Sequence record: KY555144.1
Strand: one strand, 5' to 3'
Length of the DNA: 64,000 nucleotides
The position numbers and the translations under genes are program-made. Under the pieces are notes generated by a model. That model was not told where the DNA came from and did no database searches. It worked only from the letters and a program-made list of their open reading frames with translations. The stretch's first letter is position 1. Every line of letters begins with the position of its first letter. Below are positions 2,986-53,514 of this stretch, in pieces.

Positions 2986-3000
2986 GTCGTGAATCTTGAC
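2986..3000 (+). promoter_or_regulatory. Recurring promoter motif GTCGTGAATCTTGAC (GANTC abutting a TTGAC -35 box)
   Basis: Exact motif 54 bp before the 3054 start; ATGGTTAA (reverse of TTAACCAT) at 3040-3047. Confidence 0.7.
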
Positions 3001-3053
3001 GTTCCTGGATGATCGTGGCATCCAGGGACACCTCCTTTCATGGTTAATGCCCG

Positions 3054-3704
3054 ATGCCGAGCTTCCACGACGTCCTGTTCCCCGAGACCATCAGCTACGG
3101 CTCGTCCGGTGGTCCGAAGTTCAAGACCACGATCTTCCAGGCCGACAGCGGCTTTGAGCAGCGCAACAAGGACTGGAGCGACATCCGCTGCGAGTACGAT
3201 GTCGCCCAGTCGATCCGCTCGACCGAGGACATGGACGAGCTTCGCGCCTTCTTCATGGCCCGCAACGGCCGCGCCCACGGTTTCCGCTACAAGGACTGGG
3301 GCGACTTCCGCCTCAAGAACCAGTTGATCGGCGTCGGCGACGGCCTCACCAAGGTCTTCCAGATCGTCAAGACCTATACCAGTGTCGCCCACGACGGCAC
3401 CGAGTACACCTACACCCGCACGATCCGCAAGCCCAAGTGGGACTCGATCGCCGGCGTCAAGGTCGGCGCCGTGGTCCAGGTCGCCCCGACCAACTACGAG
3501 GTCGACTATTCGACCGGCCTGATGACCTTCGTCACCGCGCCGCCGGCCGACGCCCCGGTCACCATTGGCCTGGGCGAGTTCCACGTCCCCGTCCGCTTCG
3601 ACACCGACTTCATGGACGTCACCCAGGAGTTCTGGATGCGCGAGACGTGGCCCAACATCCCGATCGTCGAAATCCGTGACTGGCAAGAGGCCCTGACGCC
3701 GTGA
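3054..3704 (+). CDS. DUF2460/TIGR02217 distal tail protein (GTA-like)
   Basis: FHDVLFP...YGSSGGPKFKT...SGFEQRN...FFMARNGRAHGFRYKDW...FHVPVRFDTD signature. Confidence 0.9.
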   Translation: MPSFHDVLFPETISYGSSGGPKFKTTIFQADSGFEQRNKDWSDIRCEYDVAQSIRSTEDMDELRAFFMARNGRAHGFRYKDWGDFRLKNQLIGVGDGLTKVFQIVKTYTSVAHDGTEYTYTRTIRKPKWDSIAGVKVGAVVQVAPTNYEVDYSTGLMTFVTAPPADAPVTIGLGEFHVPVRFDTDFMDVTQEFWMRETWPNIPIVEIRDWQEALTP

Positions 3705-5326
3705 AATCCGTCCCCGAAGACCTGATGGCGCACCTCCAGGAGGAGGTGACCACGCTGGCGACGTGCATCACGATCGTGCGCCAGGACGGCAAGGCGTTCT
3801 TCATGACCGACCACGACCGGCCGATCAAGTTCGAGAACCAGACCTACGTCCCCTACGACTCCTACCAGCGCACGTCGATCCTGATGTCGTCGGAACTGGA
3901 AGTCGACACCGCCGACATCACCGCCTTCCTGACCTCGAACGGGGTGACGCGCGACGACGTGGCCTCGGGCCTGTTCGACTACGCCGCGATCAAGGTCCAA
4001 TTGCTGAACTACGAGCGGCCCGAGGACGGGGCGACCCTGCTCCGCAAAGGCACGTTCGGCGAAGTGACCATGAACCAGGACGAGACCTTCTCGGCCGAAA
4101 TCCGGGGCATGACCCAGGTCCTGACCTACCGGGTCGGGGAGACCTACGCGCCCGAGTGCCGGGCCGACCTCGGCGACCGCCGCTGCAAGATCGGTCTGAT
4201 GCCTGAGGAGTGGCAGGCCAACAAATACTACGGCCTCGACGCCTGCGTGCTGGGCGAACTTGTGGCCCCGACGTCGTTCGTCAATCCCGTGGTCGTCAAC
4301 GGCAACTTCGAGGACGGCGCGCTCAACGCCGTCGTCACCGCGCCGACGGGCTGGGTGGCCTATGGCGATCCGACCAGCCGCTGGGTCTACAAGCACGACT
4401 GGTACAATCTGTCGCGCCCACAGGTCGGCAACCAGTTCATCGCCGCCACCCGCACCTCGATCTCCGACAAGCAGGAAGTCGCGGGCATCTACCAGGACAT
4501 CAACCTCGTCTCCGCCGGCGTGCCCGCCGCCGCGATCGACGGCGGCCTCTGCCGCGTGCGCTACAAGTCCTTCGCCGCCTGCCTCAACAACCGCGCCCAG
4601 TCGCGTGAGCGCCTGACCTGCATCAAGGCCGACGGCTCGGTGGAGACGATCTGGGACACCGGCGAGATCAAGTACCCCGAGGACCGCTGGATCGCGGTCA
4701 ACGCCGACGACATCCTGATCCCGGCGGGCACGCGCGTCCTGCGCATCGACCTGTGGTCCAAGAAGCGCAGCGTCCACGAGGAGGGCGCGGCCTATGACGG
4801 GATCAGCCTGTCGATCAACCTGCCGGCGGGCACGGCCGGCAACGCCCATGTCTATGGCGGGGTGATGTTCAAGTGCATCCAGGCGGGGATCAGCGGCGGC
4901 ACCCAGCCGGCCTGGACCAACGAACTGGGCGCCACCTATACCGACGGCACGGTCATCTGGCAGTGCGTGACCAACTACAAGAAGGTGGGCACGGTCGCCA
5001 CGGTCGCCTCCAACAAGTCGTTCACCTCGACCGACATCACCGAGCCGGCCGGTCACTATGACGGCGGCGTGCTCTACTGGGAGACCGGCCGCAACGCCGG
5101 ACGCGCCCAGGAGATCAAGACCTGGGCCGCCAACCTCTTCACGCTTTTCCAGCGCACCTACTATCCAATCACGGCGGGCGACCGCTTCGTGGTCTATCCC
5201 GGCTGCGACAAGCGCCGCGCTACCTGCGCCGACAAGTTCCACAATATCCACAATTTCCGCGCCGAGCCCGACGTGCCCGGTCAGGACATCTACTACCGCA
5301 CGCCCAACGCTCCGGAGCAGGAATGA
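3701..5326 (+). CDS. Baseplate hub protein (DUF2163/BR0599 family) with an internal insertion
   Basis: N-terminal TTLATC...FTDHDRP-like segment, CRADLGD.RC, C-terminal PGCDKRRATCADKFHNIHNFRAEPDVPG. Confidence 0.85.
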   Translation: MKSVPEDLMAHLQEEVTTLATCITIVRQDGKAFFMTDHDRPIKFENQTYVPYDSYQRTSILMSSELEVDTADITAFLTSNGVTRDDVASGLFDYAAIKVQLLNYERPEDGATLLRKGTFGEVTMNQDETFSAEIRGMTQVLTYRVGETYAPECRADLGDRRCKIGLMPEEWQANKYYGLDACVLGELVAPTSFVNPVVVNGNFEDGALNAVVTAPTGWVAYGDPTSRWVYKHDWYNLSRPQVGNQFIAATRTSISDKQEVAGIYQDINLVSAGVPAAAIDGGLCRVRYKSFAACLNNRAQSRERLTCIKADGSVETIWDTGEIKYPEDRWIAVNADDILIPAGTRVLRIDLWSKKRSVHEEGAAYDGISLSINLPAGTAGNAHVYGGVMFKCIQAGISGGTQPAWTNELGATYTDGTVIWQCVTNYKKVGTVATVASNKSFTSTDITEPAGHYDGGVLYWETGRNAGRAQEIKTWAANLFTLFQRTYYPITAGDRFVVYPGCDKRRATCADKFHNIHNFRAEPDVPGQDIYYRTPNAPEQE

Positions 5327-5748
5327 CCCGCGACGACATCGTGACCGAAGCGCGCCGCTATGTCGCGCTCCAAACCCCCTGGCGCCATCGAGGCCGCACC
5401 GAACGCGGCCTCGACTGCATCGGGCTGGCCGTCATGATCTTCGAAAAGTTCAACCTGGAGTATATGGACCAGGACGGCTACGCGCGCACGCCCGACGGCG
5501 AGAAGTTCGTCGATGTGATCCGCCAGCACATGACCCTGGCCGATCCGACGGCGCTCAAGCCGGGCATGCTGCTGTTGTTCAACGACGATGCCCGGCCCTG
5601 CCATGTCGGCATCCTGGCGCGCCAGCACGGACGCCTGACCCTGATCCACGCGACCGCCGACAAGAAGCGGACGGTCGAGGAAGTCTATGACCGCCGCTAT
5701 GCCGCCCGGTTCCGCATGGCCTTCGATTTCCCCGGCGTTGAGGACTAA
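5323..5748 (+). CDS. NlpC/P60 cell-wall peptidase (tail-associated)
   Basis: TPWRHRGR...GLDCIGL...HVGI...LIHA catalytic Cys/His pattern; GTA-like position. Confidence 0.9.
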   Translation: MTRDDIVTEARRYVALQTPWRHRGRTERGLDCIGLAVMIFEKFNLEYMDQDGYARTPDGEKFVDVIRQHMTLADPTALKPGMLLLFNDDARPCHVGILARQHGRLTLIHATADKKRTVEEVYDRRYAARFRMAFDFPGVED

Positions 5749-5750
5749 TC

Positions 5751-8700: not shown

Positions 8701-9227
8701 TCGTGTTCCTCGACGAGCGCTCGATCGAGTTCCAGGCCGAGAACCTCGACACCTCGGGCCAGAACCGCTGGTATAAGGCCGTCGGCTCGGGCATGTCGCT
8801 GTTCGAGACCGATCCGATCCAGATCAACTACCAGCCCCGCGACCTCATGCCCTACCGCCCGGCCGACATCCGTCGGGCGGTCGCGGGCGGAGACGTCACC
8901 GTGACCTGGAAGCGCCGCACGCGCTTCACGGCCACGCTGAAGGACGGCACCGGCGTGGTCAGCCTCAACGAAGGCGCCGAAGCTTACGAGGCCTATGTGC
9001 TCGCCGCACCGTACTCGGGCGACCTGTCGCGTCAAGACGCGCCGACCGCCTACCGTCGCAAATACACCCTGACGAGCCCAAGCTTCACCTACACGGCGGC
9101 CGAGCAGACGGCTGATGGATTTGACGTGAATCTTGACACTCTGCACGTGGTGATCTATCAGTTGAGTTCGGTTGTTGGTCGGGGTTTCCCCGGCGCGCGC
9201 TCGATTGAGTCCTGGCAGGACTTCTAA
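5751..9227 (+). CDS. Large tail tip/host-specificity protein (GTA megatron/Phage-tail_3-like)
   Basis: YGNVIPEIYGTARVGGNMIW, PAYRGLCYVVF, NRIPQI, LLRGRRGT motifs; follows the NlpC/P60 gene. Confidence 0.85.
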   Translation: MAAAIALPIVSAIVSTAISYAFPSDGPRLRDTKVSASTYGNVIPEIYGTARVGGNMIWSKPFTEKKKKKRAGKGGSYYNEYTYYCDFAMAFCRGPVKEVRRIWADGKVIYDTTGGSEVIDNNKYRFRFYSGDEAQLPDSLIVEDKGADYAPAYRGLCYVVFDDFALADFGNRIPQIMAEVYAGDEGGAAITDIVPLPSSPVTGGSYQLGQMMIDADRGYFYLVDPVSNPAGTVLRRFLLANGKEDRREIVSIPQAQFPPSPYDSPDLTSVRAVTSKGELLCVFGGINNYMRIEKLDPYSWQSLGTIGRSYPFAGTPENSLEHSNTNFEISRDEKGNYLCLTLGVFGEYNIFDPSDMSFKAKGAMAGWNGPATPMYICARQGGPATSRRFYHVTYAGGASLQVCSLGEVLYNHPVEFPGNSQTATAWAFWDEGDPGVVFFYSDGPNRYIAKWSESTGVLAWKTQLRNSDPFCGYGVYGLRARIKDNEFHWVYNKHLFSINTATGQWIDRTFDQDFYKSDNDKTAEQVNDGDKGLLLPRDISEDYVIYDPRRNIVICVGQIQGQNGIVHVGGYTGGKTSVGAIVERLLVSTGQMTSNDYDLTPLYDIPVYGYGYASSTDIKSIIAELRNLFMFDLVESDGRLVARVRGDQDPDAEVPWKLLGSQSGPTPDKADYWKETRMSESDLPASIDLTYSNIDDDYNPSTAKSKRIASPVATMLSRQQVKAECNLVMDATEAKNRVNIMLYTQWEERTQHQTALPWLYANLDASDLISVTMEDGRNYFERIGSIEFGADFSSRLETYGTDSGAYLSDKTGDGGGAGRPTVVPAPKPVVGFILNTPLLRDTHDSGGNFSNWYSAIGAGAPGVFLGGTMFKSANAQDYVDLYQEPESAEWGTVMGVVPSPSHGWFALDWETRITITPAVDFFELESITDDELWEGLNLVVIGDEVLQFRDAVQNADGTWTIWNLLRGRRGTQYACDNHKAGERFVFLDERSIEFQAENLDTSGQNRWYKAVGSGMSLFETDPIQINYQPRDLMPYRPADIRRAVAGGDVTVTWKRRTRFTATLKDGTGVVSLNEGAEAYEAYVLAAPYSGDLSRQDAPTAYRRKYTLTSPSFTYTAAEQTADGFDVNLDTLHVVIYQLSSVVGRGFPGARSIESWQDF
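9123..9137 (+). promoter_or_regulatory. Recurring promoter motif GACGTGAATCTTGAC inside the 3' end of the tail-tip gene
   Basis: TTGACA-N17-TATCAG, upstream of the fibre gene at 9300. Confidence 0.55.
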
Positions 9228-13100: not shown

Positions 13101-14377
13101 TGCCCGAGCGCACGCGCCTGCATCGCACCACCACCCAGGCGATCCCGTCGGGGACCTGGACGGCCGTCCAATGGGACTCGGAAGTGGAGGACCCGGTCGG
13201 GGCCTTCGTGTCGAGCGCCAATACCCGCATCACCGTCCCGGCCGGCGTCCAGAAGGCGCGGGTGACGGCCTATACGACCTGGAACACCAGCCCGACCAGC
13301 GCGACGGTCGGCTTGGCGCTGCGCCGCAATGGCGTCGAGATCGGCGCCTCGGGCGGCACCAACATCGCCGCCACCCGGACGGGGTTCGCCGAAAGCCACC
13401 TGAACCTCACCTCCGAGTGGTTCTCGGTCACGCAGGGCGACTACTACGAGGTCTATGTCCTTCAGAACTCCGGCTCCTCTCAGTCCCTGAACGGACCGGT
13501 GTCGAAGTTCGGCGAGCACTCCTACGTCCAGTTCGAATGGGACGTGGGGCCGGCGGCCCAGCAGTATGAAGCCCACGCCGCCCATAAGGGCTGGCGCGTG
13601 ATCGTCACCGAGAGCCAGATCGACACCTTCGCCACGATGGCGGAATTGAAGTTCTACGACCGGTCCGGAACCCTGGTCCCGACGACGGGCGGCAAGGTCT
13701 ACGACACCAACTCCCATGGGACCTATCCGGCCTCCCAGGCGTTCGACGGCAACACCGCCACCTACTGGTCGTCGTTGCAGCAGACCTCGACCGACCTCCC
13801 CGGTGGTCCGGGCTATATCTTCGCCTCGGGCGTGGACGTGGGGTCGTTCAAGATCACCACCACCGGCTCGGACTTCAACACCACCAACTCGCCCAAGAAC
13901 TTCTCGCTGCAATATACCGACGACGATGGCGCGTCGTGGAAGACCTACGCCGTCTACACCAACCAGACGGGCTGGGGCGTCAGCGAGGAGCGCACCTTCA
14001 CCGTGCCGGTCGTCGGCGTGGCGGCCAACGCGCCGGGCGGCGGCGACACCACGGCCGACTTCGGCTCCTTCATCGCCGGCAAGCCCCTGGCCAGCGAGAA
14101 GGCGATCCGCTACGTGGTCGCCACCCCGTTCACGGTCACGACCGGTCTCCACCAGGGCTCGGCCGAGACGGCGGCGACCGCCTCTCGCACGTTCAGCTTC
14201 GCCAAGAACGGCGTCGAGTTCCTTACCGCGACCTTCGCGGCGGCGGGGACGGTCGCCACGTTCTCGGCCAACACCGCCACGAGCTTCGCCGCCGGGGACA
14301 TCCTGCTGATCACCGCCCCGTCGACCCAGGACGCCACCCTGGCGGACATCTCCTTCACCCTCAAGGGAATCCGATAG
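10139..14377 (+). CDS. Long tail fibre/receptor-binding protein with FLxLTDTPxxY repeats and discoidin (F5/8-type)-like domains
   Basis: DUF2793-like N-terminus, about ten LTDTPSSYxG-type repeats, two AFD(G)NT..W domains. Confidence 0.8.
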   Translation: MTDYTPILKLPEVAPNQNQKEDTINTALAILESAMNNVKVYTLTGAGPRNLTEDDYTRYFLHRFSGQTAAYEVTVPAALPRWFAVENAGTFAITVRCQGVTGGLPFEVPPGKIGLAVSDGSDVRTVVPQSGMGLLQDLSDVSGVPTDKQVLRYDAATSLWKPSTFTMAFTQLTDVPGSYSAQQGKLVAVNAAGTGLEFVTSASNVNDFLDLTDTPSSYAGAAGKTVKVSSGGTGLVFGSPTFLESTDTPSSYSGGANKFVRVNPGSSALIFSDVKLTDLSDGPGTYTGFGGMFLRVKNDGTGFEFNTGSGGPDNFLDLTDTPDAYTGQASKAVRVKSDVSGLEFYTPNFLLLSDTPADYSGAANKVLRVNGAGNAVIFSTLAFQDLQNVPTAQANKWLRWNPTATALINDTPTFLGLSDTPAAYTGNEGKYVYVKGDGSGLGFTATSANLSFLELNDTIDTTYDSKTDMVPIVTIVSGSPVLQLGYYAFAKLAGVSLSSPTNGQILGYNATSGLWTNIDAPEGGGGSIGVPSYGTHPYWRLLLHATDGSTVEYGIQEIEFKHTKTGADLANGGTASASTTAEGSPDGAFDNTVGAAWFSSTAADGEWIKYHFTAPVDVRYLTLKGSQSRPNGSPSAFSVQYSDDDSVWTTAWEVTGQTGWAAGQTREFHAPIDLFFTDLADAPPSYIGQGGKALRVNTGETALEFFTPATTLATMGDVDFTFPPTDGQFLRYDNATGKWKPYTLTSEGQKAAFRGEWSGSGENITLTFDALTIPSVLSPDAPGWTIVGQADATAGTTQALKSRPIGNSGLCYVEQTVNFVGDTPFKVRYKVSSESVDVFRILVDGSVVLTDSGNNGTFEEFSTTLSGTHTIRYQYSKDPSVAVGDDCVYISQITYKKTADTPFIYGDTVTYLGNTFFCLIDNTTETPGVGTDWSMFGGSGSGTFLGLTDTPASYSGQSLKAVRVKADETGLEFYTAATGGSGGSGGVLPERTRLHRTTTQAIPSGTWTAVQWDSEVEDPVGAFVSSANTRITVPAGVQKARVTAYTTWNTSPTSATVGLALRRNGVEIGASGGTNIAATRTGFAESHLNLTSEWFSVTQGDYYEVYVLQNSGSSQSLNGPVSKFGEHSYVQFEWDVGPAAQQYEAHAAHKGWRVIVTESQIDTFATMAELKFYDRSGTLVPTTGGKVYDTNSHGTYPASQAFDGNTATYWSSLQQTSTDLPGGPGYIFASGVDVGSFKITTTGSDFNTTNSPKNFSLQYTDDDGASWKTYAVYTNQTGWGVSEERTFTVPVVGVAANAPGGGDTTADFGSFIAGKPLASEKAIRYVVATPFTVTTGLHQGSAETAATASRTFSFAKNGVEFLTATFAAAGTVATFSANTATSFAAGDILLITAPSTQDATLADISFTLKGIR

Positions 14378-14587
14378 ATGGCCGATGGGACGGCTCGCGT
14401 AACACAGGAGACGGTGGAGGTCATCTCGACCTCCCCCAAGCCCGTTCGCCTGACCCAGGAGACGGTGGAGGTCATCTCGACCACCAAGCGCCCCGCCCGT
14501 TTGACCCAGGTCACCGTGGAGGTGATCCGATCGATCGGGATCGTGACGGAGCGCCCCCGCCGCCTCATCTTCATGCTCGGAGCCTGA
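14378..14587 (+). CDS. Small protein of three 17-aa repeats (QETVEVIS...)
   Basis: Abuts both neighbours; 51-bp period at 14405, 14456 and 14507, with 27 bp identical between the first two copies. Confidence 0.7.
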   Translation: MADGTARVTQETVEVISTSPKPVRLTQETVEVISTTKRPARLTQVTVEVIRSIGIVTERPRRLIFMLGA

Positions 14588-14588
14588 C

Positions 14589-15677
14589 ATGGCCTATATT
14601 TTCGTCGACGGCTGCGATAGCGGCAGCGGCTCCACCAATACCCCGATGGCTCAAAAGTGGAGTTGGGCTGTCACCAACACGAGCTACCTCAACTGGGGTG
14701 GTACGGGACGCTTCGGCGGTCAGGCCTACTACGGCGGAGCCACCACACTCAACATCTATGGCGCCGGGAAAGCCTTCCCGCTCACCGGGACGGCGGTCGG
14801 CACCGATGAGTTCTTCATGGGGTGCAGCCTCTACGCGGCAGGCACGGCGAGCGGCGGCTACATCATGGCGTTCCAGAACTCGACGCCGGTGCTCGACGGG
14901 TCGGTCACCTTCAGCACCGGGTCGGCGCCCACCCAGTTGTCGATCCGCCTGACCGGTTCGATGACCCTGGCGATCTATCGAGGCGCGACGCTCCTGGCGA
15001 CGGGAACCACGGTCCTGACGGCGGGCCAGTGGTATCGCATCGAGGCGCGGATCGTGATCTCCAACACCGGGGTGTTCGATATTCGCCTGAACGGCAATCC
15101 CGAGATCACCTTCTCGGGCGACACTTACGATACGGGCGACCTGGGCGTGCGGCAGTTCTGCATCGTTCCGACCGCCAACACCTCTGCGTCGCTGCGTTTC
15201 GACGACATCGTGCTCTACAACAGCGCGGCGGTCGAGGGAGAGCCGACGACGTGGCTGGGCGACCTACGGATCGACACCCTGCGACCGACCGCCAACGGCG
15301 ATGTCGTCAACTCCACGCCGCTCTCGGGCGCGGCCTATGCGGCGGTCGATGAGGTGGCTATCGATGGCGACACCACCTATACCGAGTCGACCAACATCGG
15401 CGACAAGGACCTCTACCAGCTTGGCGACTTGACCGAAACGCCGCAGACGATCCATGCCGTGGTCGTTACCGCCGTGGCCAAGTCGACGGGTACGACCAAT
15501 CGGGCGATCAAGCTCAAGGTCAAGTCGAGCGTCGAGGGTGATAGCGCCGCCAAGACCGTGCCGCTGAGCGCCTATGGAGGCCTGCAAGCGTCGTTCTCTC
15601 GCGATCCGGCGACGACGGCGGCCTGGACCGCGACCGCCGTCAACGGCATGCAGGCTGGCTGGCAGGTCGACACCTGA
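14589..15677 (+). CDS. Virion structural protein with concanavalin/lectin-like beta domain
   Basis: Beta-rich; WYRIEARIVISNTGVFDIRLNG and FDDIVLY segments; last gene of the tail module. Confidence 0.55.
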   Translation: MAYIFVDGCDSGSGSTNTPMAQKWSWAVTNTSYLNWGGTGRFGGQAYYGGATTLNIYGAGKAFPLTGTAVGTDEFFMGCSLYAAGTASGGYIMAFQNSTPVLDGSVTFSTGSAPTQLSIRLTGSMTLAIYRGATLLATGTTVLTAGQWYRIEARIVISNTGVFDIRLNGNPEITFSGDTYDTGDLGVRQFCIVPTANTSASLRFDDIVLYNSAAVEGEPTTWLGDLRIDTLRPTANGDVVNSTPLSGAAYAAVDEVAIDGDTTYTESTNIGDKDLYQLGDLTETPQTIHAVVVTAVAKSTGTTNRAIKLKVKSSVEGDSAAKTVPLSAYGGLQASFSRDPATTAAWTATAVNGMQAGWQVDT

Positions 15678-15682
15678 CGAAT

Positions 15683-15720
15683 GTCGTGAATCTTGACATC
15701 GGCATGTTTCCGGACCATAG
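15683..15720 (+). promoter_or_regulatory. Recurring motif plus sigma70-type promoter for the lysis cassette
   Basis: GTCGTGAATCTTGACA-N17-CATAGT. Confidence 0.7.
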
Positions 15721-15756
15721 TCAAGGCCTTGATTTTCAGCACTTCCGGAATTCCAC

Positions 15757-16398: not shown

Positions 16399-16400
16399 TC

Positions 16401-17618: not shown

Positions 17619-17623
17619 GGACC

Positions 17624-17797: not shown

Positions 17798-17830
17798 CAC
17801 CCTGCGACATAACGTCGCATGTCATGATCC

Positions 17831-17859
17831 TTGACAGAACGACGATCTTCGAGTATGGT
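17831..17859 (+). promoter_or_regulatory. Sigma70-type promoter TTGACA-N17-TATGGT preceded by motif variant TGTCATGATCC
   Basis: -35 at 17831-17836, -10 at 17854-17859. Confidence 0.7.
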
Positions 17860-17865
17860 CGCGGC

Positions 17866-18127
17866 TCTTCGACGGCATCCCACCGTCACCTATGGCTCGC
17901 GACCCACCGTTCGCAGGGAGATGCTCGCGACCAAGGCGGTAGCCGGAACGACGCTAGGCTGCAAAGCCAAGCCTCCGGAACACGCAGCAGCCGGCTGGAA
18001 CGCTAGGCCGTTACGTCCAAACGGGGCCAGGACCTGTGAGGCGAAAGCCGAAAGGCCCCACCACCCGACAAGGGTTCACGCGTGATGCGGAAGAAGGACG
18101 TCAGTCCTGAAGTGTCTCAGGTACAGA
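17866..18127 (+). ncRNA. Candidate ~260-nt structured ncRNA of unknown family
   Basis: Bounded by a promoter and a terminator; no credible ORF; many hairpins, including GNRA loops. Confidence 0.5.
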
Positions 18128-18157
18128 AGGCCCGCCGGTTTCCCGGCGGGCCTTTTT
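18127..18157. terminator. Intrinsic terminator between convergent units
   Basis: GGCCCGCCGG/CCGGCGGGCC stem followed by TTTTT. Confidence 0.85.
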
Positions 18158-18176
18158 CTGGTCTGGAGACAGGGCC

Positions 18177-18977
18177 TTAGTCGACCGCTTCCAGGCGCCG
18201 GCGCTTGGGTGCGCTCGCCGGCAGGGACGGGGCCAGATCGCCGATCTTGCCGACCACCTTGCCGAGGAACACGATCCGCTTGGGATCGACGTCGACATGA
18301 TCCTTCAAGTCGGCGCTATAGACCCGGAACGCGCCGCCCTTGGAGGGACGGGTGACGTGCGCGACCTGCATGACCTTGTCCATGCCGTAGACGAACTCGC
18401 CGCCGGCGGCGCTGGGCTCGACATCGCGGCGGACCACCGCCATGTCGCCCGGCTTGAGACCAGGGGCGAAGTCGTGGATCGGCGCCAGGGCCAGATCGGT
18501 CGGTTCGGCCTCGAACCGTTCACGCAGCCAGTCAGGATCGAGGTTCCAGGTCCGGGCGCGCTTGAACTCGCCAAGGCGGCCTTTGAAGGTCACTTCCTCG
18601 ACCGGGTTGGGCGCGCCGACCCCGAAGGTGATGTATTCGGGCGTCGTCTTGAGGACGTGGGCGATCTGCTCCAGCACGTCGATGTGCGGCTTGACGCTGT
18701 CGGACTCGTACATGATGTACGCCGTGCGCGCCAGCGGCCGGCGCTCGCCAGCCTGCTTCGGCTCCCAGCCCGGCTTGGTGCTGGTGTCCTTGCGCGAATT
18801 GCTCTGTTGGGTCAAGTAGACCTGCGAGGCCACTTGCTCCTGGGTCATGTCCAGGGCCTTCCGGCAGGCGGTGATCCGCTGCCCGATGGTCTGAGGATGC
18901 GCAAGATCGGCATCCTTGTGGATCAAGGAACGAGCGCGATGGGGCACCATCGGCTTCAGTTCGGCCACGGCTTGCAT
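18177..18977 (-). CDS. XRE-family HTH regulator with S24/LexA-like C-terminal domain
   Basis: IGQRITACRKALDMTQEQVA...YESDSVKP...IAHVLKTTPEYITFG; C-terminal PGDMAVV...FLGKVVG. Confidence 0.75.
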   Translation of the reverse strand: MQAVAELKPMVPHRARSLIHKDADLAHPQTIGQRITACRKALDMTQEQVASQVYLTQQSNSRKDTSTKPGWEPKQAGERRPLARTAYIMYESDSVKPHIDVLEQIAHVLKTTPEYITFGVGAPNPVEEVTFKGRLGEFKRARTWNLDPDWLRERFEAEPTDLALAPIHDFAPGLKPGDMAVVRRDVEPSAAGGEFVYGMDKVMQVAHVTRPSKGGAFRVYSADLKDHVDVDPKRIVFLGKVVGKIGDLAPSLPASAPKRRRLEAVD

Positions 18978-19839: not shown

Positions 19840-19856
19840 TATTTTCGGGCCTCTGG

Positions 19857-24257: not shown

Positions 24258-24272
24258 GTCAAGATTCACGAC
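24258..24272 (-). promoter_or_regulatory. Recurring motif and promoter for nrdA
   Basis: Minus strand GTCGTGAATCTTGACT-N17-TATCTT; TTAACCAT at 24228-24235. Confidence 0.7.
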
Positions 24273-24313
24273 ACTCGTGGACCCCTCAAAGATTCCTTGA
24301 CAGCCCCTCGGAT

Positions 24314-25176: not shown

Positions 25177-25190
25177 GCTCGGCTCCGGTG

Positions 25191-25231
25191 ATGTCGTGTC
25201 TCCTGACGATTGATGTCAGGATTCACGACAT
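25191..25231. promoter_or_regulatory. Inverted pair of motif variants
   Basis: ATGTCGTG-TC-TCCTGAC-N7-GTCAGGA-TT-CACGACAT. Confidence 0.6.
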
Positions 25232-31279: not shown

Positions 31280-31327
31280 CGGGCGATCTCGTTCGGGAGT
31301 GTCTTGTTAACCAAGTTCCGGATGGGT

Positions 31328-31342
31328 GTCAAGATTCACGAC
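31328..31342 (-). promoter_or_regulatory. Recurring motif and promoter
   Basis: Minus strand GTCGTGAATCTTGACA-N17-TAACAA. Confidence 0.65.
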
Positions 31343-32025
31343 ATAGAAAGTCGCGAAGCACGACTCACGCCCTGGGCTTTGATGATCTCGTAGATGCGCT
31401 GGGCCGACAGGCTGTAGGCCTCGGCCAGTTGCGCCACCGGCTCGCCCTTGGCGTAGCAGTCGGCGATCTCGGCGTAGAACCGCTTCTTGGCCTCCTCCCG
31501 GCGCAGCTTGGCGTCGGGGGCGTGGCGGTCGATGAAGCGGTAGATCGCGATCCGGCTGACCCCGTAGTCCTTGGCGATCAAGGGCACAGGGGCGAAGGCG
31601 GCGTAGCTTTCGATGATGTCGGCGGCGTGGTCGGCGAGGGCCATGGTGTTCTCCAGGAGGGCGAGAGCGCGGTCGATCACCACCGCCGCGCGCTTCGAGG
31701 GCTGTTTGGTCAGGAAGCCGCAGCGGCGGCCGGCGGCGTAGGGCGGCTCCAGCCCTTCGCAGAGGTACTGGTCGGCGGTCGGGTCCGCGCGGTAGCCGCC
31801 GGCGGCCTCAAGCCACCAGTGGGTCCCGCCGTCGGGGTCGCGTCCGACCATCGGCCGCCAGCCGCCGTCCCAACCGTCCAGCAGATGCCAGAGCGCCTCG
31901 GAGGCGACATAGCAGTGCCCGGCGGTCGGGTTGGAAGCCGTGTACGCGGAACGATAGGGCTCGTGCAGAAGCTCGGGTGTGAGGCTCTTCTGGACCGCGA
32001 TAAGGGTTTCGAGCGGCGCCTGCAT
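31336..32025 (-). CDS. Hypothetical protein with C-terminal tandem HTH-like segments (229 aa)
   Basis: ATG overlaps the polymerase stop (ATGA); IAKDYGVSRIAIY and LAEAYSLSAQRIYEII. Confidence 0.6.
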   Translation of the reverse strand: MQAPLETLIAVQKSLTPELLHEPYRSAYTASNPTAGHCYVASEALWHLLDGWDGGWRPMVGRDPDGGTHWWLEAAGGYRADPTADQYLCEGLEPPYAAGRRCGFLTKQPSKRAAVVIDRALALLENTMALADHAADIIESYAAFAPVPLIAKDYGVSRIAIYRFIDRHAPDAKLRREEAKKRFYAEIADCYAKGEPVAQLAEAYSLSAQRIYEIIKAQGVSRASRLSMS

Positions 32026-35316: not shown

Positions 35317-35371
35317 GGCTCTATGGTTAACGGATGTCGTGAATCACGTCAAGAAATGTCGTCAACGACGA

Positions 35372-36615: not shown

Positions 36616-38306
36616 TACCTGCCGTTGAAGGTGATCAGCGCCCGCTTGCCGTTCGGGTACTGCACGCAGTGGGTGTGCGCCCAGGACGAGGGGCCGGTGT
36701 TGTAGCCCATGTCCAGCTTCGAGGTCGTGCCGGTGTTGTAGGCGCTCTCGAAAATGCCGGGCGAGTGGGTATGACCAAACGTAGTCTTCGGGCCGATCTT
36801 GGCGAACTGCTGGATGTTGCCGCGCGAGCCGTTGGCGCCGTTATGCCCGTGGTTGGAGTGCTCGACCCCGCCAACGACGCAGGACTCGTCCTCGCGCAGG
36901 AACTTCACGCCGTTGCAGTTCCAGACGTCGAAGGCGTTGGTCATCACCTCCTCGAAGATCGAGAAGTTCTTTTCGCCGGTCCGGATCGAGGCGTAGACCG
37001 CCCGCTGGCAGGTGAGGAAGAACTCGGCGTTGACCGGGTCGGCGCGGTAGTCGGCCGTCTTCAGCCATTTGTTGAGCGCCAGATCGTGGTTGCTCTCGAC
37101 CACCGTGACCTTCGAGTCCGGGGCCTGCCGGCCCAGGATGGTCAGGAACATCGCCACCTCGCGTAGTTCCTGCTCGACGCTTTCGGAGCCCTTGACATAG
37201 AGCCGGAAGCGATCGTGCGGATCGGCGATGTTGTGGTGGTTGCGCGCCCGGAAGTCGGAGACGTCGTGGACGAAGATGTGCTCGGGCCGCAGGACGTCGA
37301 TCATCGACGGCGTCGCCACGCTACCCCACACCCGGCTCCCGTCGGCCGAGCGCTGCTCGGTCGGGAAGAAGCCGAAGGTGGCGGCCGACACCTCGGGATC
37401 GATCTGCGCCACGTGGACGTCGCCGGGCGTCAGGCAGGCCACGCGATGGCCCTCGGTGACCACGCCGTCCTTGACGAAGACGTCCAGGTCATAGAACGAG
37501 CCGTCGGTGTCGCCCAGCAGGTGGCGGCAGAAGAACTTGCCGTCCTCGTCGACCTCGACCAGCACCGCGCCCAACTGGTGGTGGAAGCTGGCCTTGATCC
37601 CGGCCTTCTTGGGAACGTAGTTCGGCTTGGTGACCGCGCCCGTCGTCATGATCTGCTTGGACGGGGTGTGCTTCATCGTCGGAACGCTGACGAGTTGCAC
37701 CTTGGCGTGGGGGAAGATGCCCCAGCGCTCGCGGGTGTAGGAGTGGAAGCCCGACAGCGGGTTCTCGGCCGTGGGGAGGGTGTTCATCTCGCCGCAGAAG
37801 TCGATCCGGTCGGCGATCCGCACGCGCTCGGCGACGAGGTATTCCATCACCCGCTTGTGGAAGAACGCCGCGTGCTTGGCGTGGTCCTCGAACAGGCGCT
37901 TGGAGTAGGTGAAGCCAGCGATCATGATCTCGCACGGCGCGTCCCGGCGCAGGTGCTCGGCATAGGCCTCCAGGTTGTCGACGAACTCCTCGTGGATGTG
38001 CGTCGAATCCTGGGCCGAGGACAGGATGAACCGCCGGCGCCCGGTGGTCTCATCCACCGTCACGGTCCGGGCGGCGGGCGCCGGCCGGTGCGACAGCGGG
38101 TCCTTGCGCATCGAGTAGAGGCGGTTCTGGAGCGTCGTGCGCTTGACGCTGTACTTGCGCGAGAACGCCCGCTGGCCGCCGGCCTTCTTGACCATCGCGT
38201 TCAGTTCTTCCGGCGACACCGAGTAGATGTCGAACGGACCCTCGGCCGGCAGGGCGGCCTTGGGCTTCTTGCCCGCCTTGGAAGCGTGTTCGAACTCAGC
38301 CGGCAT
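36603..38306 (-). CDS. Calcineurin-like metallophosphoesterase with N-terminal HTH-like region
   Basis: GDVH, HDVSDF, ESNHD, HGH and GHTH metal-binding motifs. Confidence 0.7.
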   Translation of the reverse strand: MPAEFEHASKAGKKPKAALPAEGPFDIYSVSPEELNAMVKKAGGQRAFSRKYSVKRTTLQNRLYSMRKDPLSHRPAPAARTVTVDETTGRRRFILSSAQDSTHIHEEFVDNLEAYAEHLRRDAPCEIMIAGFTYSKRLFEDHAKHAAFFHKRVMEYLVAERVRIADRIDFCGEMNTLPTAENPLSGFHSYTRERWGIFPHAKVQLVSVPTMKHTPSKQIMTTGAVTKPNYVPKKAGIKASFHHQLGAVLVEVDEDGKFFCRHLLGDTDGSFYDLDVFVKDGVVTEGHRVACLTPGDVHVAQIDPEVSAATFGFFPTEQRSADGSRVWGSVATPSMIDVLRPEHIFVHDVSDFRARNHHNIADPHDRFRLYVKGSESVEQELREVAMFLTILGRQAPDSKVTVVESNHDLALNKWLKTADYRADPVNAEFFLTCQRAVYASIRTGEKNFSIFEEVMTNAFDVWNCNGVKFLREDESCVVGGVEHSNHGHNGANGSRGNIQQFAKIGPKTTFGHTHSPGIFESAYNTGTTSKLDMGYNTGPSSWAHTHCVQYPNGKRALITFNGRYWRL

Positions 38307-38997
38307 AGAGAAGCTCCGGTTTGGCGCTGACCGGCTTGGACCAATCCCAGACGTACCAAGCGTAGGCGAAGCGCGGGGCGCCCTTGGTGCCGGCGATCCA
38401 GCGGGGGCGGTGACGAAGGGTGACCTTCGCGGTGAAAGCGGGGTGATCGAACAGGTCCGCGCGCGAGCGCGCCGCGTCCCATTCGTGGCGGCAGAGGAAG
38501 GCCACGAGGCCCTGGTCGGCCTCCATCAGGTCCAGCGCGTGGCGCGCGGCGCGCTCGGCGTCCTTGCCGTAGGGCGGGTTGGTGATGATCGCGTCCGGAC
38601 GCGGCGGCAACGGCGTGCTCTTGCGCTCCTCGCCCTTCTCGTCGACAACCGTCTCGGGCCGGACCTTCAGCGCGCCCAGGCGGTCGAGGTCGGCCGGCGT
38701 CAGCTTGAAGAAGTCCTCGACCGCGTCGACCTCGAAGCCCTCGTAGCGGTGGATGTCCGTGGCGAGGACTTCCTGCACGAAGGGCTTGAGCGGCGTGGCG
38801 ATGGCGCCGTTGCCGGCGAAGGGCTCCCAGGCGAAGAACGGGGCGAAATCATCGCCCAGGGCCTCGATCAGGGCGTCGAAGGCCGGCCGAGGAGTCGGGT
38901 AAAAGTCCAGCGGGGTCCTGGCATATCCGGAGGCGCCCAGCATGGAGGGGTCTTTGCGACCAGCATCGGAGAGAGACATGGTCGTGAGGGATGTCAT
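38296..38997 (-). CDS. Amino (N6-adenine-type) DNA methyltransferase
   Basis: DFYPTP, WEPFAGNGAI (motif I), IITNPPY (motif IV). Confidence 0.82.
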   Translation of the reverse strand: MTSLTTMSLSDAGRKDPSMLGASGYARTPLDFYPTPRPAFDALIEALGDDFAPFFAWEPFAGNGAIATPLKPFVQEVLATDIHRYEGFEVDAVEDFFKLTPADLDRLGALKVRPETVVDEKGEERKSTPLPPRPDAIITNPPYGKDAERAARHALDLMEADQGLVAFLCRHEWDAARSRADLFDHPAFTAKVTLRHRPRWIAGTKGAPRFAYAWYVWDWSKPVSAKPELLYAG

Positions 38998-39054
38998 GGT
39001 TAACGAAGGGTGTCAAGATTCACGACATTGACTGTCGTGACGCAGCACGTTAAT
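38996..39054. promoter_or_regulatory. Divergent promoter region
   Basis: Minus-strand motif at 39012-39027, TTAACCAT at 38996-39003, inverted repeat TCACGACA/TGTCGTGA, and plus-strand TTGACT-N17-TAATCA (-35 at 39028). Confidence 0.65.
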
Positions 39055-44943: not shown

Positions 44944-44994
44944 GGACGCCGCACGTGGTTAACGCGCGGACTGTCGCCCATCACGACACTAGAT

Positions 44995-45030
44995 GTCAAG
45001 ATTCATGACTTGACCCAAGGCGTTAACCAT
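44995..45030. promoter_or_regulatory. Recurring motif (minus strand) plus TTAACCAT in a divergent intergenic region
   Basis: GTCAAGATTCATGAC at 44995-45009; TTAACCAT at 45023-45030. Confidence 0.65.
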
Positions 45031-50932: not shown

Positions 50933-51025
50933 GGCAAACTCCGAAAGGCAGGCTTGAGTGAATGTGTTGCCGATCCTTCTAGCGAGGCGTTCTGGCTCTG
51001 TCAACACACTCCAGCCTGCCGGGAT

Positions 51026-51040
51026 GTCGTGAATCTTGAC
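51026..51040 (+). promoter_or_regulatory. Recurring promoter motif
   Basis: GTCGTGAATCTTGAC at the divergence point of the rII and + strand units. Confidence 0.65.
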
Positions 51041-51232
51041 GTTCCGCAACGCCTGAGGCATGCTCGTATTCATGCGGAACATCACGGCTGAAGCGACGGG
51101 CAAGACCCGCACTTGCACGTCCGAGGATTATCCCTGGCCCCCGCGCGGGTCCGAGGGATGCGATTGCATGGAAAAGTCCAGCAACCCCAAGCGTGACTTC
51201 ATGCTGATCGCCGACCGCACCGGTGTAATCGT

Positions 51233-52735: not shown

Positions 52736-52744
52736 GAGGGCGCG

Positions 52745-53158
52745 ATGACCTATGTCTGCACCGCCGAGACCGACGAGATCATCAACGCCCAGCCCGTTGA
52801 TCTGGACGCGGCCGAGGCCCTGCTGCGTCCGCGTCCGAACTTCGCCAAGGCCAGAGGCGTCTGCCGCGAGTGCGGCGCGCCCAAGAACGAACGGCGCCTG
52901 GGTGCGGACTTCTGCTCGACCCGCTGCCGCTCGGACTTCCACAACCGGGCCAAGATCGAGGGCGCGTCGCTGATCCACATCGTCAAGCGCTGGCGGCGCT
53001 ATCGTCGCCCTGGCGACTTCGCCTTGATGACCAAGATGGCGGATGACCTGATCCGCGCCGACAAGCTCGCCAACCGCAGCTTCTATCCCGACCCGCCGGC
53101 CACGGCTCACGCCAAGGTCGTCGCCACCAACATCGCCGGGCGCCGCAAGGCCCGTTAG
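52745..53158 (+). CDS. Hypothetical Zn-finger protein (137 aa)
   Basis: CRECG...FCSTRC; GGAGG RBS. Confidence 0.7.
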   Translation: MTYVCTAETDEIINAQPVDLDAAEALLRPRPNFAKARGVCRECGAPKNERRLGADFCSTRCRSDFHNRAKIEGASLIHIVKRWRRYRRPGDFALMTKMADDLIRADKLANRSFYPDPPATAHAKVVATNIAGRRKAR

Positions 53159-53172
53159 TCCAGGAGTACAGT

Positions 53173-53427
53173 TTGACCACGCCGAACCAAGCCCCCGTCC
53201 ACACCATCGAGAGCGGTGGTCACCTCTTCCAGGTCTATGCGGCCCCGGAGAACCACACCCACCGCTACATCGGCTATTGCGACGGGGCGATCAGCGTCAG
53301 CGGCTCCAGCGTTGACGTCGTTCTGCGGGCCTTGGTGACCAAACATCCGGCGGTGCGGCCCAGCGGCGAGGTGATCGATTTCACCGCCTATCGCCTCAAA
53401 CGCCTGGGCGAGGAATTCGCCGCCTGA
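53173..53427 (+). CDS. Hypothetical protein (84 aa)
   Basis: AGGAG RBS before a TTG start. Confidence 0.6.
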   Translation: MTTPNQAPVHTIESGGHLFQVYAAPENHTHRYIGYCDGAISVSGSSVDVVLRALVTKHPAVRPSGEVIDFTAYRLKRLGEEFAA

Positions 53428-53444
53428 CGTCGTGATTTAACACT

Positions 53445-53514
53445 GTCATGAATCTTGACACCTGTCGGGATTGGAGGCTAGATGGCTCCCGCCTTTCACC
53501 CCCGTCCCGACAGG
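53445..53514 (+). promoter_or_regulatory. Recurring motif followed by a 10-bp inverted repeat before the primase start
   Basis: GTCATGAATCTTGACA at 53445-53460; CCTGTCGGGA (53461-53470) / TCCCGACAGG (53505-53514). Confidence 0.6.

What the first reader, a model, noticed from the sequence alone, without database searches (positions are those of the whole stretch)
2986..53460. Window-wide promoter motif TGTCRTGAATCTTGAC places a CcrM GANTC site against the -35 box
Seen: near-exact copies at 2986(+), 9123(+), 15683(+), 24258(-), 25215(-), 31328(-), 39012(-), 44995(-), 51026(+) and 53445(+), with variants at 17820 and 35335. They lie upstream of genes and point in the direction of transcription. 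Several have a -10-like hexamer 17 bp after TTGACN. The half-site TGTCRTGA also occurs as inverted pairs (25191-25231, about 39020-39040). Known: GANTC is the CcrM methylation site, and GcrA activates sigma70 promoters near methylated GANTC. Inference: phage promoters are gated by methylation state or by a phage regulator such as the XRE proteins at 18177 or 58315.
Basis: partly seen in the sequence, partly recalled or inferred. Interest (0 to 1): 0.68.

Follow-up and report, generated by a model that had tools for sequence, protein, structure and literature searches.

The report
Phage promoter family with built-in operator
The repeated 16-base motif is real and marks one of two promoter families of Caulobacter phage Ccr5; it looks like a normal host-type -35 box fused to the binding site of a regulator made by the phage, and the host methylation site inside it is most likely a by-product of that site, not a cell-cycle switch.

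Summary
The window is Caulobacter phage Ccr5 (phiCbK-like), record positions 62001-126000. The motif is real: 11 copies with at most 2 mismatches against 0.07 expected. Genome-wide there are about 24 copies. They head the virion, lysis and DNA-replication operons and are absent from the early-gene arms, which use a second promoter family (GTGTTGACA-N17-CTAGAAG).

The motif reads best as a 17-bp dyad, TGTCGTGA-N-TCACGACA, whose right half is replaced by the sigma-73 -35 box (TCTTGACA).
- Near-perfect palindromes occur without a -35 box.
- Weaker second sites sit exactly 22 bp away at 7 of 17 promoters.
- The left half changes by phage lineage (TGTCGTGA, TGCCAGGA, TGACGY, TGCCGTAA).

GANTC arises only where the half-site ends in GA. 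It is present in about 79% of copies here, 48% in Brevundimonas phage Bajun and 13-30% in more distant relatives.

For host GcrA the site is in the wrong place (about -38, upstream of the -35) and in the worst-ranked flank context (TGAATCT). Relatives without a phage GcrA gene still carry the motif.

The sign of control is unresolved and no transcription start data could be obtained. Other agents of this scan reached the same reading on sister phages.

The parts
2985..3001 (+). class A promoter-operator copy (AGTCGTGAATCTTGACG), 54 nt upstream of gp093 (tail module)
9122..9138 (+). class A copy (TGACGTGAATCTTGACA) inside the 3' end of gp096, 163 nt upstream of gp097
15682..15698 (+). class A copy, -10 CATAGT at 17 bp, 60 nt upstream of the lysozyme gene gp101 (lysis cassette)
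17820..17836 (+). class A copy without GANTC (TGTCATGATCCTTGACA), -10 TATGGT; no annotated gene downstream; the GANTC-less state is kept at the same place in Rogue and Bajun
17860..18165 (+). about 300-nt unannotated stretch between the 17820 promoter and a terminator-like hairpin (about 18128-18160); candidate non-coding RNA
24258..24274 (-). class A copy, -10 TATCTT, 107 nt upstream of ribonucleotide reductase alpha (gp109c)
25214..25230 (-). class A copy with CTGACA as -35, 39 nt upstream of gp112c
25192..25208 (.). auxiliary weak operator exactly 22 bp from the 25214 site, on its downstream side (over the -10 region)
31327..31343 (-). class A copy, 49 nt upstream of gp118c (exonuclease)
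31349..31365 (.). auxiliary weak operator 22 bp upstream of the 31327 site
35335..35351 (.). near-perfect 17-bp palindrome TGTCGTGAATCACGTCA between gp122c and gp121c. On the gene (-) strand its other arm supplies a TTGACG -35 box, so the operator fills the spacer of the C5-methylase/DNA-polymerase promoter. A weaker site follows at 35357-35373
39011..39027 (-). class A copy, 69 nt upstream of the annotated start of gp124c (putative N6-adenine methylase), which is followed by the A1-like gene
39033..39049 (.). auxiliary weak operator 22 bp upstream of the 39011 site
44994..45010 (-). class A copy (R = A, the most palindromic form), 52 nt upstream of helicase gp127c; auxiliary site at 44972-44988
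51025..51041 (+). class A copy, 32 nt upstream of gp135 (little or no leader); back to back with a class B promoter
51000..51007 (-). class B (early-type) promoter core GTGTTGAC, facing rIIA/rIIB-like gp134c/gp133c
53444..53460 (+). class A copy, -10 CTAGAT, 60 nt upstream of gp141
18177..18977 (-). gp106c, an XRE-type HTH protein with a C-terminal part that looks like a cI/LexA oligomerisation domain; best candidate for the protein that binds the operator
58315..58731 (+). gp144, a small HTH protein in an operon headed by a class B promoter at 57657; second candidate regulator
38296..38943 (-). gp124c, annotated hypothetical; a small gamma-class amino-methyltransferase (EPFAGNG ... NPPY) of unknown target

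Best explanation
The motif is the core of one of two promoter families of phage Ccr5, here called class A. Each copy is a host sigma-73 promoter with a consensus -35 box (TTGACA) and a weak -10. The -35 box doubles as the promoter-proximal half of a 17-bp dyad-symmetric operator, ideally TGTCGTGA-N-TCACGACA and in promoters TGTCGTGA-A-TCTTGACA, centred near -38.

A dimeric DNA-binding protein made by the phage binds this operator, often together with a weaker site exactly 22 bp away. In this way it sets the activity of the replication, virion and lysis operons. The early-gene arms use a different, self-sufficient promoter family (class B).

The GANTC is simply the inner ends of the two half-sites (..GA N TC..).

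Shown: the motif family, its placement, the dyad, the 22-bp register and the lineage-specific half-sites.

Inferred: that a phage protein binds it; that this protein is the XRE/cI-like gp106c (18177-18977); and the sign of control. I lean about 55:45 to activation, because the -10 boxes are weak. At sites whose partner operator covers the -10 or the spacer, repression is more likely.
For: 1. Reality and placement.
- 11 copies in the window against 0.07 expected.
- A mixture model on all TTGAC sites gives a class of 26, about 24 of them convincing. All lie at 19-115 kb, plus two at 201-203 kb.
- Ten of the 11 window copies lie 32-163 nt upstream of same-strand genes.

2. A second family.
- cTGGC..GTGTTGACA-N17-CTAGAAG has 22 copies, all at 113-200 kb.
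- -10 information is 4.7 bits in class B against 2.9 bits in class A.
- No sigma-70 region 2 or 4 domain is found in five related phages, so host sigma is used.

3. Operator features.
- TGTCRTGA occurs 31 times against 10.9 expected, with extra copies beside promoters.
- Window 35335 is one mismatch from a perfect 17-bp palindrome and lacks a -35 box on that strand. Colossus has three sites one mismatch from TGCCAGGA-N-TCCTGGCA.
- Seven of 17 strict Ccr5 copies have a second site (at least 11 of 16 matches) at exactly +/-22 bp, and none at 21 or 23 bp. The same holds in Rogue and Bajun, and at -23 bp in Colossus.

4. Co-evolution.
- The left half is TGTCGTGA in Ccr5 and Rogue, CGTCGTGA in Bajun, TGCCAGGA in Colossus and CcrPW, TGACGY in BL9, TGCCGTAA in Domovoi and GTCCAGTA in Cp1R7A-A1. 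Several of these phages infect the same host strain.
- At the orthologous methylase/polymerase promoter both arms carry the lineage's own half-site in Ccr5, Rogue and Colossus.

5. Candidate protein.
- A gp106c homologue is found in all nine phages that have the motif class. The A1-like protein and gp144 are missing from Cp1R7A-A1.
- The only Ccr5-type palindrome with at most one mismatch in the 280-kb Colossus genome lies in the 340-bp gap upstream of the gp106c orthologue. The same is true in CcrPW. A 3-mismatch one lies upstream of the BL9 orthologue, and ATGTCGTCTCACGACAT lies upstream of the Cp1R7A-A1 one.
- gp106c matches HTH_3 and PHROG 4 'transcriptional repressor' over both domains.
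Against: - No transcription start, binding or expression data could be obtained. The public RNA runs are held only as contigs, and the per-gene phage table of the published time course is cut off in the held copy.
- An operator centred at -38 that covers a perfect -35 box is an unusual geometry for an activator.
- In Colossus the palindrome upstream of the gp106c orthologue (TGYCGTGA type) differs from that phage's own class A half-site (TGCCAGGA). One protein may therefore not serve both.
- Ccr5's own gp106c upstream region has a different palindrome (TGTCAATTTCGACA).
- The recognition-helix residues of the five gp106c orthologues do not track the half-site types in any clear way.
- The cI/LexA-like C-terminal domain is only hinted at (Peptidase_S24 E = 0.047 in Bajun), and the structure job failed.
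- According to the published summary, the genes behind class A promoters are expressed at different times: replication early, virion and lysis later (PMC10688885). The operator alone therefore cannot set timing.
Confidence: 0.6

Rival explanations
1. Host GcrA/CcrM gating. CcrM methylates the GANTC beside the -35 box, and host GcrA, riding on sigma-73, activates the promoters according to their methylation state or the cell-cycle stage.
For: - GANTC is depleted in the phage: 284 sites against 652 (mononucleotide) or 1091 (Markov-1) expected. Yet it is present in about 19 of 24 class A copies.
- GAATC can serve as a GcrA box in PcsM.
- The weak -10 boxes would suit a factor that helps open-complex formation.
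- At 35335 the GANTC lies in the spacer of the gene-strand promoter, near a known GcrA position.
Against: - The site is centred near -38. Known boxes are at -20+/-1, -30+/-2 or +5 to +30, and sigma region 4 plus the linker length are reported to bar the GcrA DNA-binding domain from DNA upstream of the -35.
- TGAATCT = AGATTCA is ranked 32nd of 32 for GcrA occupancy.
- The central N is almost always A, which a CcrM site does not need.
- GANTC-less copies keep the rest of the motif and stay GANTC-less at orthologous places (17820 in three phages).
- GANTC is a minority state in Domovoi (4/18), Gurke (3/10), Cp1R7A-A1 (3/14) and BL9.
- phiCbK-type phages infect swarmer cells, which lack GcrA (PMC3556154).
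Confidence: 0.07
2. The phage's own GcrA homologue (Ccr5 gp224c, outside the window) is a re-tuned sigma-70 cofactor. It reads GAATC at -38 and steers host RNA polymerase to class A promoters, possibly without needing methylation.
For: - The phage protein keeps the sigma-binding domain and the CCCH zinc finger.
- It has changes at four of the base- or methyl-contacting residues (R33K, N34S, I37C, H41D), and its linker is about 10 residues longer.
- The three lineages with a full-length GcrA gene have the highest or near-highest GANTC shares: about 79%, 78% and 48%.
Against: - Colossus, CcrPW, BL9 and Cp1R7A-A1 have no GcrA gene yet carry the same promoter class. CcrPW has 10/18 GANTC, more than the GcrA-positive Bajun at 15/31.
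- The trend is confounded with phylogeny.
- A monomeric GcrA domain explains neither the dyad, the 22-bp partner sites nor the lineage-specific left half.
Confidence: 0.08
3. No dedicated factor. The 11 bases upstream of the -35 are an extended -35 or UP-like element that strengthens binding of host RNA polymerase by itself, and the copies look alike because they spread by duplication or gene conversion.
For: - The AWTC just upstream of TTGAC is shared by nine phages of Caulobacter, Brevundimonas and Mesorhizobium. WWTCTTGAC occurs 15-26 times per genome against 0-3 in the reversed control. This suits a contact with conserved host polymerase.
- Flanks outside about 20 bp are not conserved.
Against: - Class B promoters of the same phage lack this element and have the stronger -10.
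- The left half changes in concert in all copies of a genome but differs between phages of the same host strain.
- Left half-sites and full palindromes occur without a -35 box, and partner sites sit at exactly 22 bp.
- A scan of 596 Gb of bacterial genomes found only single matches, at most one per locus.
Confidence: 0.12
4. Host CtrA (with SciP) is the main switch. The promoters are held off in swarmer cells through TTAACCAT half-sites, and the upstream element is secondary.
For: - TTAAC lies within -60 to +90 of 14 of 31 class A hits against about 2 expected, and 0 of 22 class B. Most lie between the -35 and about +12.
- TTAACCAT is the ungapped CtrA motif, and half-sites over the -10 go with repression (PMC6180460).
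- CtrA binds and regulates phiCbK terminal-repeat promoters (PMC9437464).
Against: - Half of the class A copies have no TTAAC.
- Its position varies over about 35 bp.
- It cannot explain the conserved 17-mer.
- This reading is compatible with the best explanation as an added layer of control, not a replacement for it.
Confidence: 0.1

Closest known systems
Lambdoid operators OR1/OR2 at PRM/PR (cI, Cro)
   Same: A 17-bp dyad-symmetric site abuts or overlaps a -35 box. A second site lies about two helical turns away (22 bp here, 23-24 bp in lambda). The candidate binder has an XRE-type HTH plus a C-terminal oligomerisation-like domain. In lambda the same protein can activate or repress depending on the site's position.
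   Different: This is a strictly lytic 219-kb phage with about 24 copies spread over the genome, not one immunity region. The site is centred near -38 and covers a consensus -35 box. No binding has been shown.
T4 middle promoters (MotA box with AsiA)
   Same: A phage-specific element at or near the -35 region defines a temporal class of promoters that host sigma-70 polymerase reads with phage help. A separate early class needs no help.
   Different: The MotA box replaces the -35 box and needs sigma remodelling. Here the -35 box is a perfect host consensus, and no MotA or AsiA relatives were sought or seen.
GcrA-dependent methylated promoters of Caulobacter crescentus
   Same: A GANTC lies inside a sigma-73 promoter, and the phage encodes a GcrA homologue.
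   Different: The position (-38 against -20, -30 or +5 to +30), the flanks (TGAATCT against YGAKTCK) and the loss of GANTC in relatives all depart from the defined class.
CtrA-regulated promoters in the terminal repeats of phiCbK-like phages (Mascolo et al. 2022, PMC9437464)
   Same: Same phage group. Host cell-cycle regulator sites are embedded in phage promoters, and TTAACCAT half-sites also accompany class A promoters.
   Different: Those sites are full CtrA boxes clustered in the terminal repeats and were shown to bind CtrA. The motif studied here is a different sequence in the central modules, and I did not find it described in that paper.

Membership tests
Sigma-70/sigma-73 housekeeping promoter | -35 hexamer close to TTGACA | tested here: met
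   TTGAC is invariant in 10 of 11 window copies (CTGAC in one), followed by A, G or T
Sigma-70/sigma-73 housekeeping promoter | -10 element 16-18 bp downstream | tested here: inconclusive
   Three of five copies in 14000-33900 pass a generic scan. Overall -10 information is only 2.9 bits, against 4.7 in class B
Sigma-70/sigma-73 housekeeping promoter | Transcripts start a few bases after the -10 | not testable with these tools
   The RNA runs that hold the phage are kept only as assembled contigs
GcrA/CcrM-dependent promoter | GANTC within the promoter | tested here: met
   About 19 of 24 Ccr5 copies
GcrA/CcrM-dependent promoter | Box centred at -20+/-1, -30+/-2 or +5 to +30 | tested here: not met
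   GANTC occupies -40 to -36 when TTGACA is -35 to -30.
GcrA/CcrM-dependent promoter | Flanks near YGAKTCK | tested here: not met
   TGAATCT = AGATTCA, ranked 32nd of 32
GcrA/CcrM-dependent promoter | Activity depends on methylation and on GcrA | not testable with these tools
   Needs reporters in ccrM and gcrA strains
Operator of a dimeric HTH regulator (lambda type) | Dyad symmetry of the site | tested here: met
   Promoter copies match 15 of 17 positions of TGTCGTGA-N-TCACGACA. 35335 matches 16 of 17, and Colossus has three sites at 16 of 17 of its own palindrome
Operator of a dimeric HTH regulator (lambda type) | Helically phased neighbouring sites | tested here: met
   Seven of 17 have a partner at exactly +/-22 bp, none at 21 or 23 bp
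Operator of a dimeric HTH regulator (lambda type) | The site co-varies with a cognate phage protein | tested here: inconclusive
   Half-sites differ by lineage. Palindromes lie upstream of gp106c orthologues in Colossus, CcrPW, BL9 and Cp1R7A-A1. Recognition-helix residues do not track them clearly
Operator of a dimeric HTH regulator (lambda type) | Protein binding shown | not testable with these tools
   Needs EMSA, DAP-seq or ChIP-seq
CtrA-regulated promoter | TTAA-N7-TTAA or TTAACCAT near the -35 or -10 | tested here: met
   True for a subset: 14 of 31 class A hits against about 2 expected, and 0 of 22 class B

The most novel reading that the evidence does not exclude
The operator is methylation-sensitive by design. 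Because its dyad centre is a GANTC in the phiCbK, Rogue and Bajun lineages, N6-adenine methylation would change the regulator's affinity. The methylation could come from host CcrM or from the phage's own uncharacterised NPPY methylase gp124c, which sits behind one of these promoters. The phage could then tell incoming or unreplicated DNA from newly replicated DNA. Combined with the CtrA half-sites over the -10 regions, this would tie the switch to virion and lysis gene expression to phage replication and to the host's swarmer-to-stalked transition.
Probability: 0.1. Interest if true: 0.75.

Novelty: new member of a known kind. Interest (0 to 1): 0.42.

Why it matters
phiCbK is the standard phage of the Caulobacter cell-cycle model, yet I found no description of its promoters. 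The 2012 genome paper mentions no promoter motif, and a full-text search for the core string gave only unrelated papers.

Knowing that the genome runs on two promoter families gives a concrete map of the transcription programme:
- a self-sufficient early class;
- a class carrying an operator for a phage regulator, often with CtrA half-sites.

It also names testable regulators, gp106c first, and explains where the apparent CcrM sites come from. That should keep others from over-reading them as an epigenetic switch.

Tried and rejected
- **Published time course.** The RNA-seq table of PMC10688885 (S3) is cut off in the held copy before the phage sheet, so no per-gene temporal class was available.
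- **Public RNA runs.** Four 2023 RNA-seq runs hold a 98%-identical phage, but only as contigs spanning the whole stretch. They carry no start sites, strand or levels (5,901 letters were laid, within the operators' limit).
- **Bacterial genome scan.** There is no sign of a host regulon.
- **Full-text search.** A search for GAATCTTGAC returned only unrelated papers.
- **CcrM-type methylase.** None (PF01555) was found in five related phages.
- **Phage sigma factor.** None was found: PF04542 and PF08281 gave only sub-threshold hits.
- **Solved structures.** Sequence searches for gp106c and gp124c found nothing.
- **Rfam.** No family covers the 17860-18165 stretch; only terminator-driven sub-threshold hits appeared.
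- **GANTC share against a phage GcrA gene.** The ranges overlap (Bajun 48% with GcrA, CcrPW 55% without), so I rejected it as evidence.
- **Repeat or mobile element.** Rejected, because conservation ends within about 20 bp.

Full report
**Identity of the window**

The window is 100% identical to Caulobacter phage Ccr5 (KY555144.1), record positions 62001-126000. Ccr5 is a phiCbK-like siphophage of 218,729 bp. The window covers the end of the tail module, the lysis cassette, the DNA-replication module on the minus strand, a tRNA/RNA island and the start of one early-gene arm. I rebuilt the whole record from six annotated pieces. For comparison I fetched the full genomes of CcrRogue, Brevundimonas phage Bajun, CcrColossus and CcrBL9. 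I also fetched motif neighbourhoods from Gurke, Domovoi, CcrPW and Mesorhizobium phage Cp1R7A-A1.

- TGTCRTGAATCTTGAC has 11 matches with at most 2 mismatches, against 0.07 expected.
- Ten copies lie 32-163 nt upstream of same-strand annotated genes.
- A generic sigma-70 scan of a 20-kb stretch finds three sites, and all three are motif copies.
- Conservation is confined to about 20 bp (a/tTGTCGTGAATCTTGACA). The -10 signal at a 17-bp spacer is only weak.

**Two promoter families**

A mixture model over all 508 TTGAC sites of Ccr5 separates two classes.
It has 26 members, about 24 of them convincing. All lie at 19-115 kb, plus two at 201-203 kb, in front of virion, tRNA, tail, lysis and replication genes.
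- Class B is cTGGC...GTGTTGACA-N17-CTAGAAG followed by a GACGACAAC..GGAGG leader. Its 22 copies all lie at 113-200 kb, in the two arms of small unknown genes.

Class B has the better -10 (4.7 against 2.9 bits). None of five related phages encodes a recognisable sigma-70 domain, so both classes must be read by host sigma-73.

**The motif is an operator fused to a -35 box**

The 17-mer TGTCGTGA-A-TCTTGACA is two mismatches from the perfect palindrome TGTCGTGA-N-TCACGACA. Those two mismatches are exactly what turns the right arm into TTGACA.

- Window 35335 (TGTCGTGAATCACGTCA) is one mismatch from the palindrome. On the gene strand it fills the spacer of the promoter for the C5-methylase/DNA-polymerase operon.
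- Colossus has three sites one mismatch from its own palindrome, TGCCAGGA-N-TCCTGGCA.
- The half-site TGTCRTGA occurs 31 times against 10.9 expected, with extra copies next to promoters.
- Seven of 17 strict Ccr5 copies have a second, weaker site with at least 11 of 16 matches at exactly +/-22 bp, and none at 21 or 23 bp. Rogue and Bajun show the same, and Colossus shows it at -23 bp.

Dyad symmetry plus helically phased partner sites is the signature of a dimeric regulator that binds cooperatively.

**The regulator is most likely made by the phage**

The left half differs by lineage:
- TGTCGTGA in Ccr5 and Rogue;
- CGTCGTGA in Bajun;
- TGCCAGGA in Colossus and CcrPW;
- TGACGY in BL9;
- TGCCGTAA in Domovoi;
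- GTCCAGTA in Cp1R7A-A1.

Ccr5, Rogue, Colossus, CcrPW and BL9 all grow on C. crescentus. At the orthologous methylase/polymerase promoter both arms carry the lineage's own half-site in Ccr5, Rogue and Colossus.

Three candidates were compared across the nine phages.
- The XRE-type protein gp106c (18177-18977) has homologues in all nine, though the Cp1R7A-A1 hit is weak, E = 7e-6.
- The A1-like protein is absent from Cp1R7A-A1.
- The small HTH protein gp144 is also absent from Cp1R7A-A1.

The placement of palindromes also points to gp106c.
- The only Ccr5-type palindrome with at most one mismatch in the whole Colossus genome lies in the 340-bp gap upstream of the gp106c orthologue.
- CcrPW has the same site.
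- BL9 has a 3-mismatch version upstream of its orthologue.
- Cp1R7A-A1 has ATGTCGTCTCACGACAT upstream of its own.

gp106c matches HTH_3 and PHROG 4 'transcriptional repressor' over both halves. A Peptidase_S24-like C-terminal domain is only hinted at. In Ccr5, Rogue and Bajun the gene sits behind a class-B-like promoter, so it would be made early.

This is circumstantial, and there are counter-points.
- The Colossus autoregulatory-looking palindrome is not of that phage's class A type.
- Ccr5's own gp106c leader has a different palindrome.

**GANTC is a by-product**

A half-site that ends in GA, with one central base, gives GA-N-TC automatically. Where the inner end differs, GANTC is gone but the promoter class remains:

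| Phage | Common linker(s) | Copies with GANTC |
|---|---|---|
| Domovoi | AAATC (10 of 18) | 4 of 18 |
| Gurke | AATTC, AAATC | 3 of 10 |
| Cp1R7A-A1 | AATTC | 3 of 14 |
| BL9 | WWTC | 2 |
| Colossus | mixed | about 10 of 25 |
| CcrPW | GAATC | 10 of 18 |
| Bajun | GAATC, plus a CGATC subfamily of six | 15 of 31 |

Within Ccr5, five copies lack GANTC. The one at 17820 is GANTC-less at the same place in Rogue and Bajun. What is shared by all nine phages is AWTC directly before TTGAC.

**Against host GcrA**

- Known boxes are centred at -20+/-1, -30+/-2 or +5 to +30.
- Sigma region 4 on the -35 box, together with the linker length, is reported to keep the DNA-binding domain from DNA upstream of the -35 (PMC4647560, PMC9976885, PMC5887438). 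Here the site is at -40 to -36.
- Its heptamer, TGAATCT = AGATTCA, is the lowest-ranked of the 32 contexts.

**The phage's own GcrA homologue**

The phage GcrA homologue lies at record positions 162434-162982, outside the window.
- It keeps the sigma-binding domain and the zinc finger.
- It has R33K, N34S, I37C and H41D in the DNA- and methyl-reading helix.
- Its linker is about 10 residues longer.

A re-tuned cofactor therefore cannot be excluded. But Colossus, CcrPW, BL9 and Cp1R7A-A1 lack the gene and still have the promoter class, and the GANTC shares overlap between GcrA-positive and GcrA-negative phages.

**Methylases**

No CcrM-type methylase is encoded. The phage does encode a small NPPY methylase, gp124c, behind the 39012 copy. 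Its target is unknown.

GANTC is strongly depleted in the phage: 284 sites against 652-1091 expected.

**CtrA half-sites**

TTAAC, the core of the ungapped CtrA motif TTAACCAT, lies within -60 to +90 of 14 of 31 class A hits. About 2 are expected, and none of 22 class B promoters has one. Most lie between the -35 and about +12. Half-sites over the -10 are associated with repression by CtrA (PMC6180460). CtrA is already known to act on phiCbK terminal-repeat promoters (PMC9437464). This may add a cell-cycle layer to class A promoters and deserves its own test.

**What remains open**

- No start-site, binding or per-gene expression data were reachable.
- The sign of control is unknown.
- Class A operons are reported to differ in timing: replication early, virion and lysis later (PMC10688885). 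The operator therefore cannot be the only determinant.

**Other reports of this scan**

Seven earlier reports of this scan on sister phages (Rogue, Karma and others) reached the same general reading. They are not independent evidence. I re-derived the points here and added:
- the palindrome reading and the 22-bp register;
- the nine-phage linker census;
- the link between palindromes and the gp106c gene;
- the comparison of GcrA residues;
- the CtrA half-site enrichment.

Noticed in passing
window 51000-51007 (-) and 57657-57664 (+); genome-wide record positions 113-200 kb: A second promoter family: cTGGC..(A/T)GTGTTGACA-N17-CTAGAAG followed by a conserved GACGACAAC..GGAGG leader. It has 22 copies, confined to the early-gene arms. 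The -10 is close to the Caulobacter sigma-73 consensus as I recall it (GCTANAWC).
   Followed up: partly
near class A promoters, e.g. window 39000-38990 (-), 31305 (-), 24235 (-), 44960 (-): The CtrA half-site TTAACCAT/GTTAAC is enriched around class A promoters (14 of 31 against about 2 expected) and absent from class B. It lies mostly between the -35 and about +12, a placement linked to repression by CtrA.
   Followed up: partly
window 17860-18165 (+): The GANTC-less motif copy at 17820 faces about 300 nt without an annotated gene, ending in a terminator-like hairpin. Sequence blocks and part of a predicted fold are conserved in Rogue and Bajun. No Rfam family matches. Possibly a phage non-coding RNA.
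   Followed up: partly
window 40046-40532 (-) and 41041-41359 (+): Rfam gathering-level hits to GOLLD RNA (171 bits, with a tRNA embedded at 40400-40464) and to a permuted tmRNA (72 bits). Both lie in the tRNA island, and neither is annotated in the Ccr5 record.
   Followed up: no
window 38296-38943 (-): gp124c, annotated 'hypothetical protein', has motif I (EPFAGNG) before motif IV (NPPY) and matches PHROG 799 'DNA methyltransferase' (E = 6e-53). It is a small gamma-class amino-methyltransferase of unknown target. It is conserved next to the A1-like gene in Rogue, Bajun, Colossus and BL9.
   Followed up: partly
L005:2434-2982 (-), Ccr5 record 162434-162982, outside the window: The phage GcrA homologue keeps the sigma-binding domain and the CCCH zinc finger. 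It differs from host GcrA at four DNA- or methyl-contacting residues (R33K, N34S, I37C, H41D), and its linker is about 10 residues longer.
   Followed up: partly
whole Ccr5 genome: GANTC is about 2- to 4-fold under-represented: 284 sites in 208 kb against 652 (mononucleotide) or 1091 (Markov-1) expected. By my own estimate (4542 sites over a host genome of about 4 Mb) this density is similar to the host chromosome's.
   Followed up: partly
Mesorhizobium phage Cp1R7A-A1 (L217-L230): A distant relative (42% DNA-polymerase identity) has about 14-20 promoters of the form GTCCAGT-AATTC-TTGACA. Some are back-to-back pairs that form near-perfect palindromes (GTCAAGAAATTCTTGAC). The promoter-operator design is therefore older than the Caulobacter phages.
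   Followed up: no
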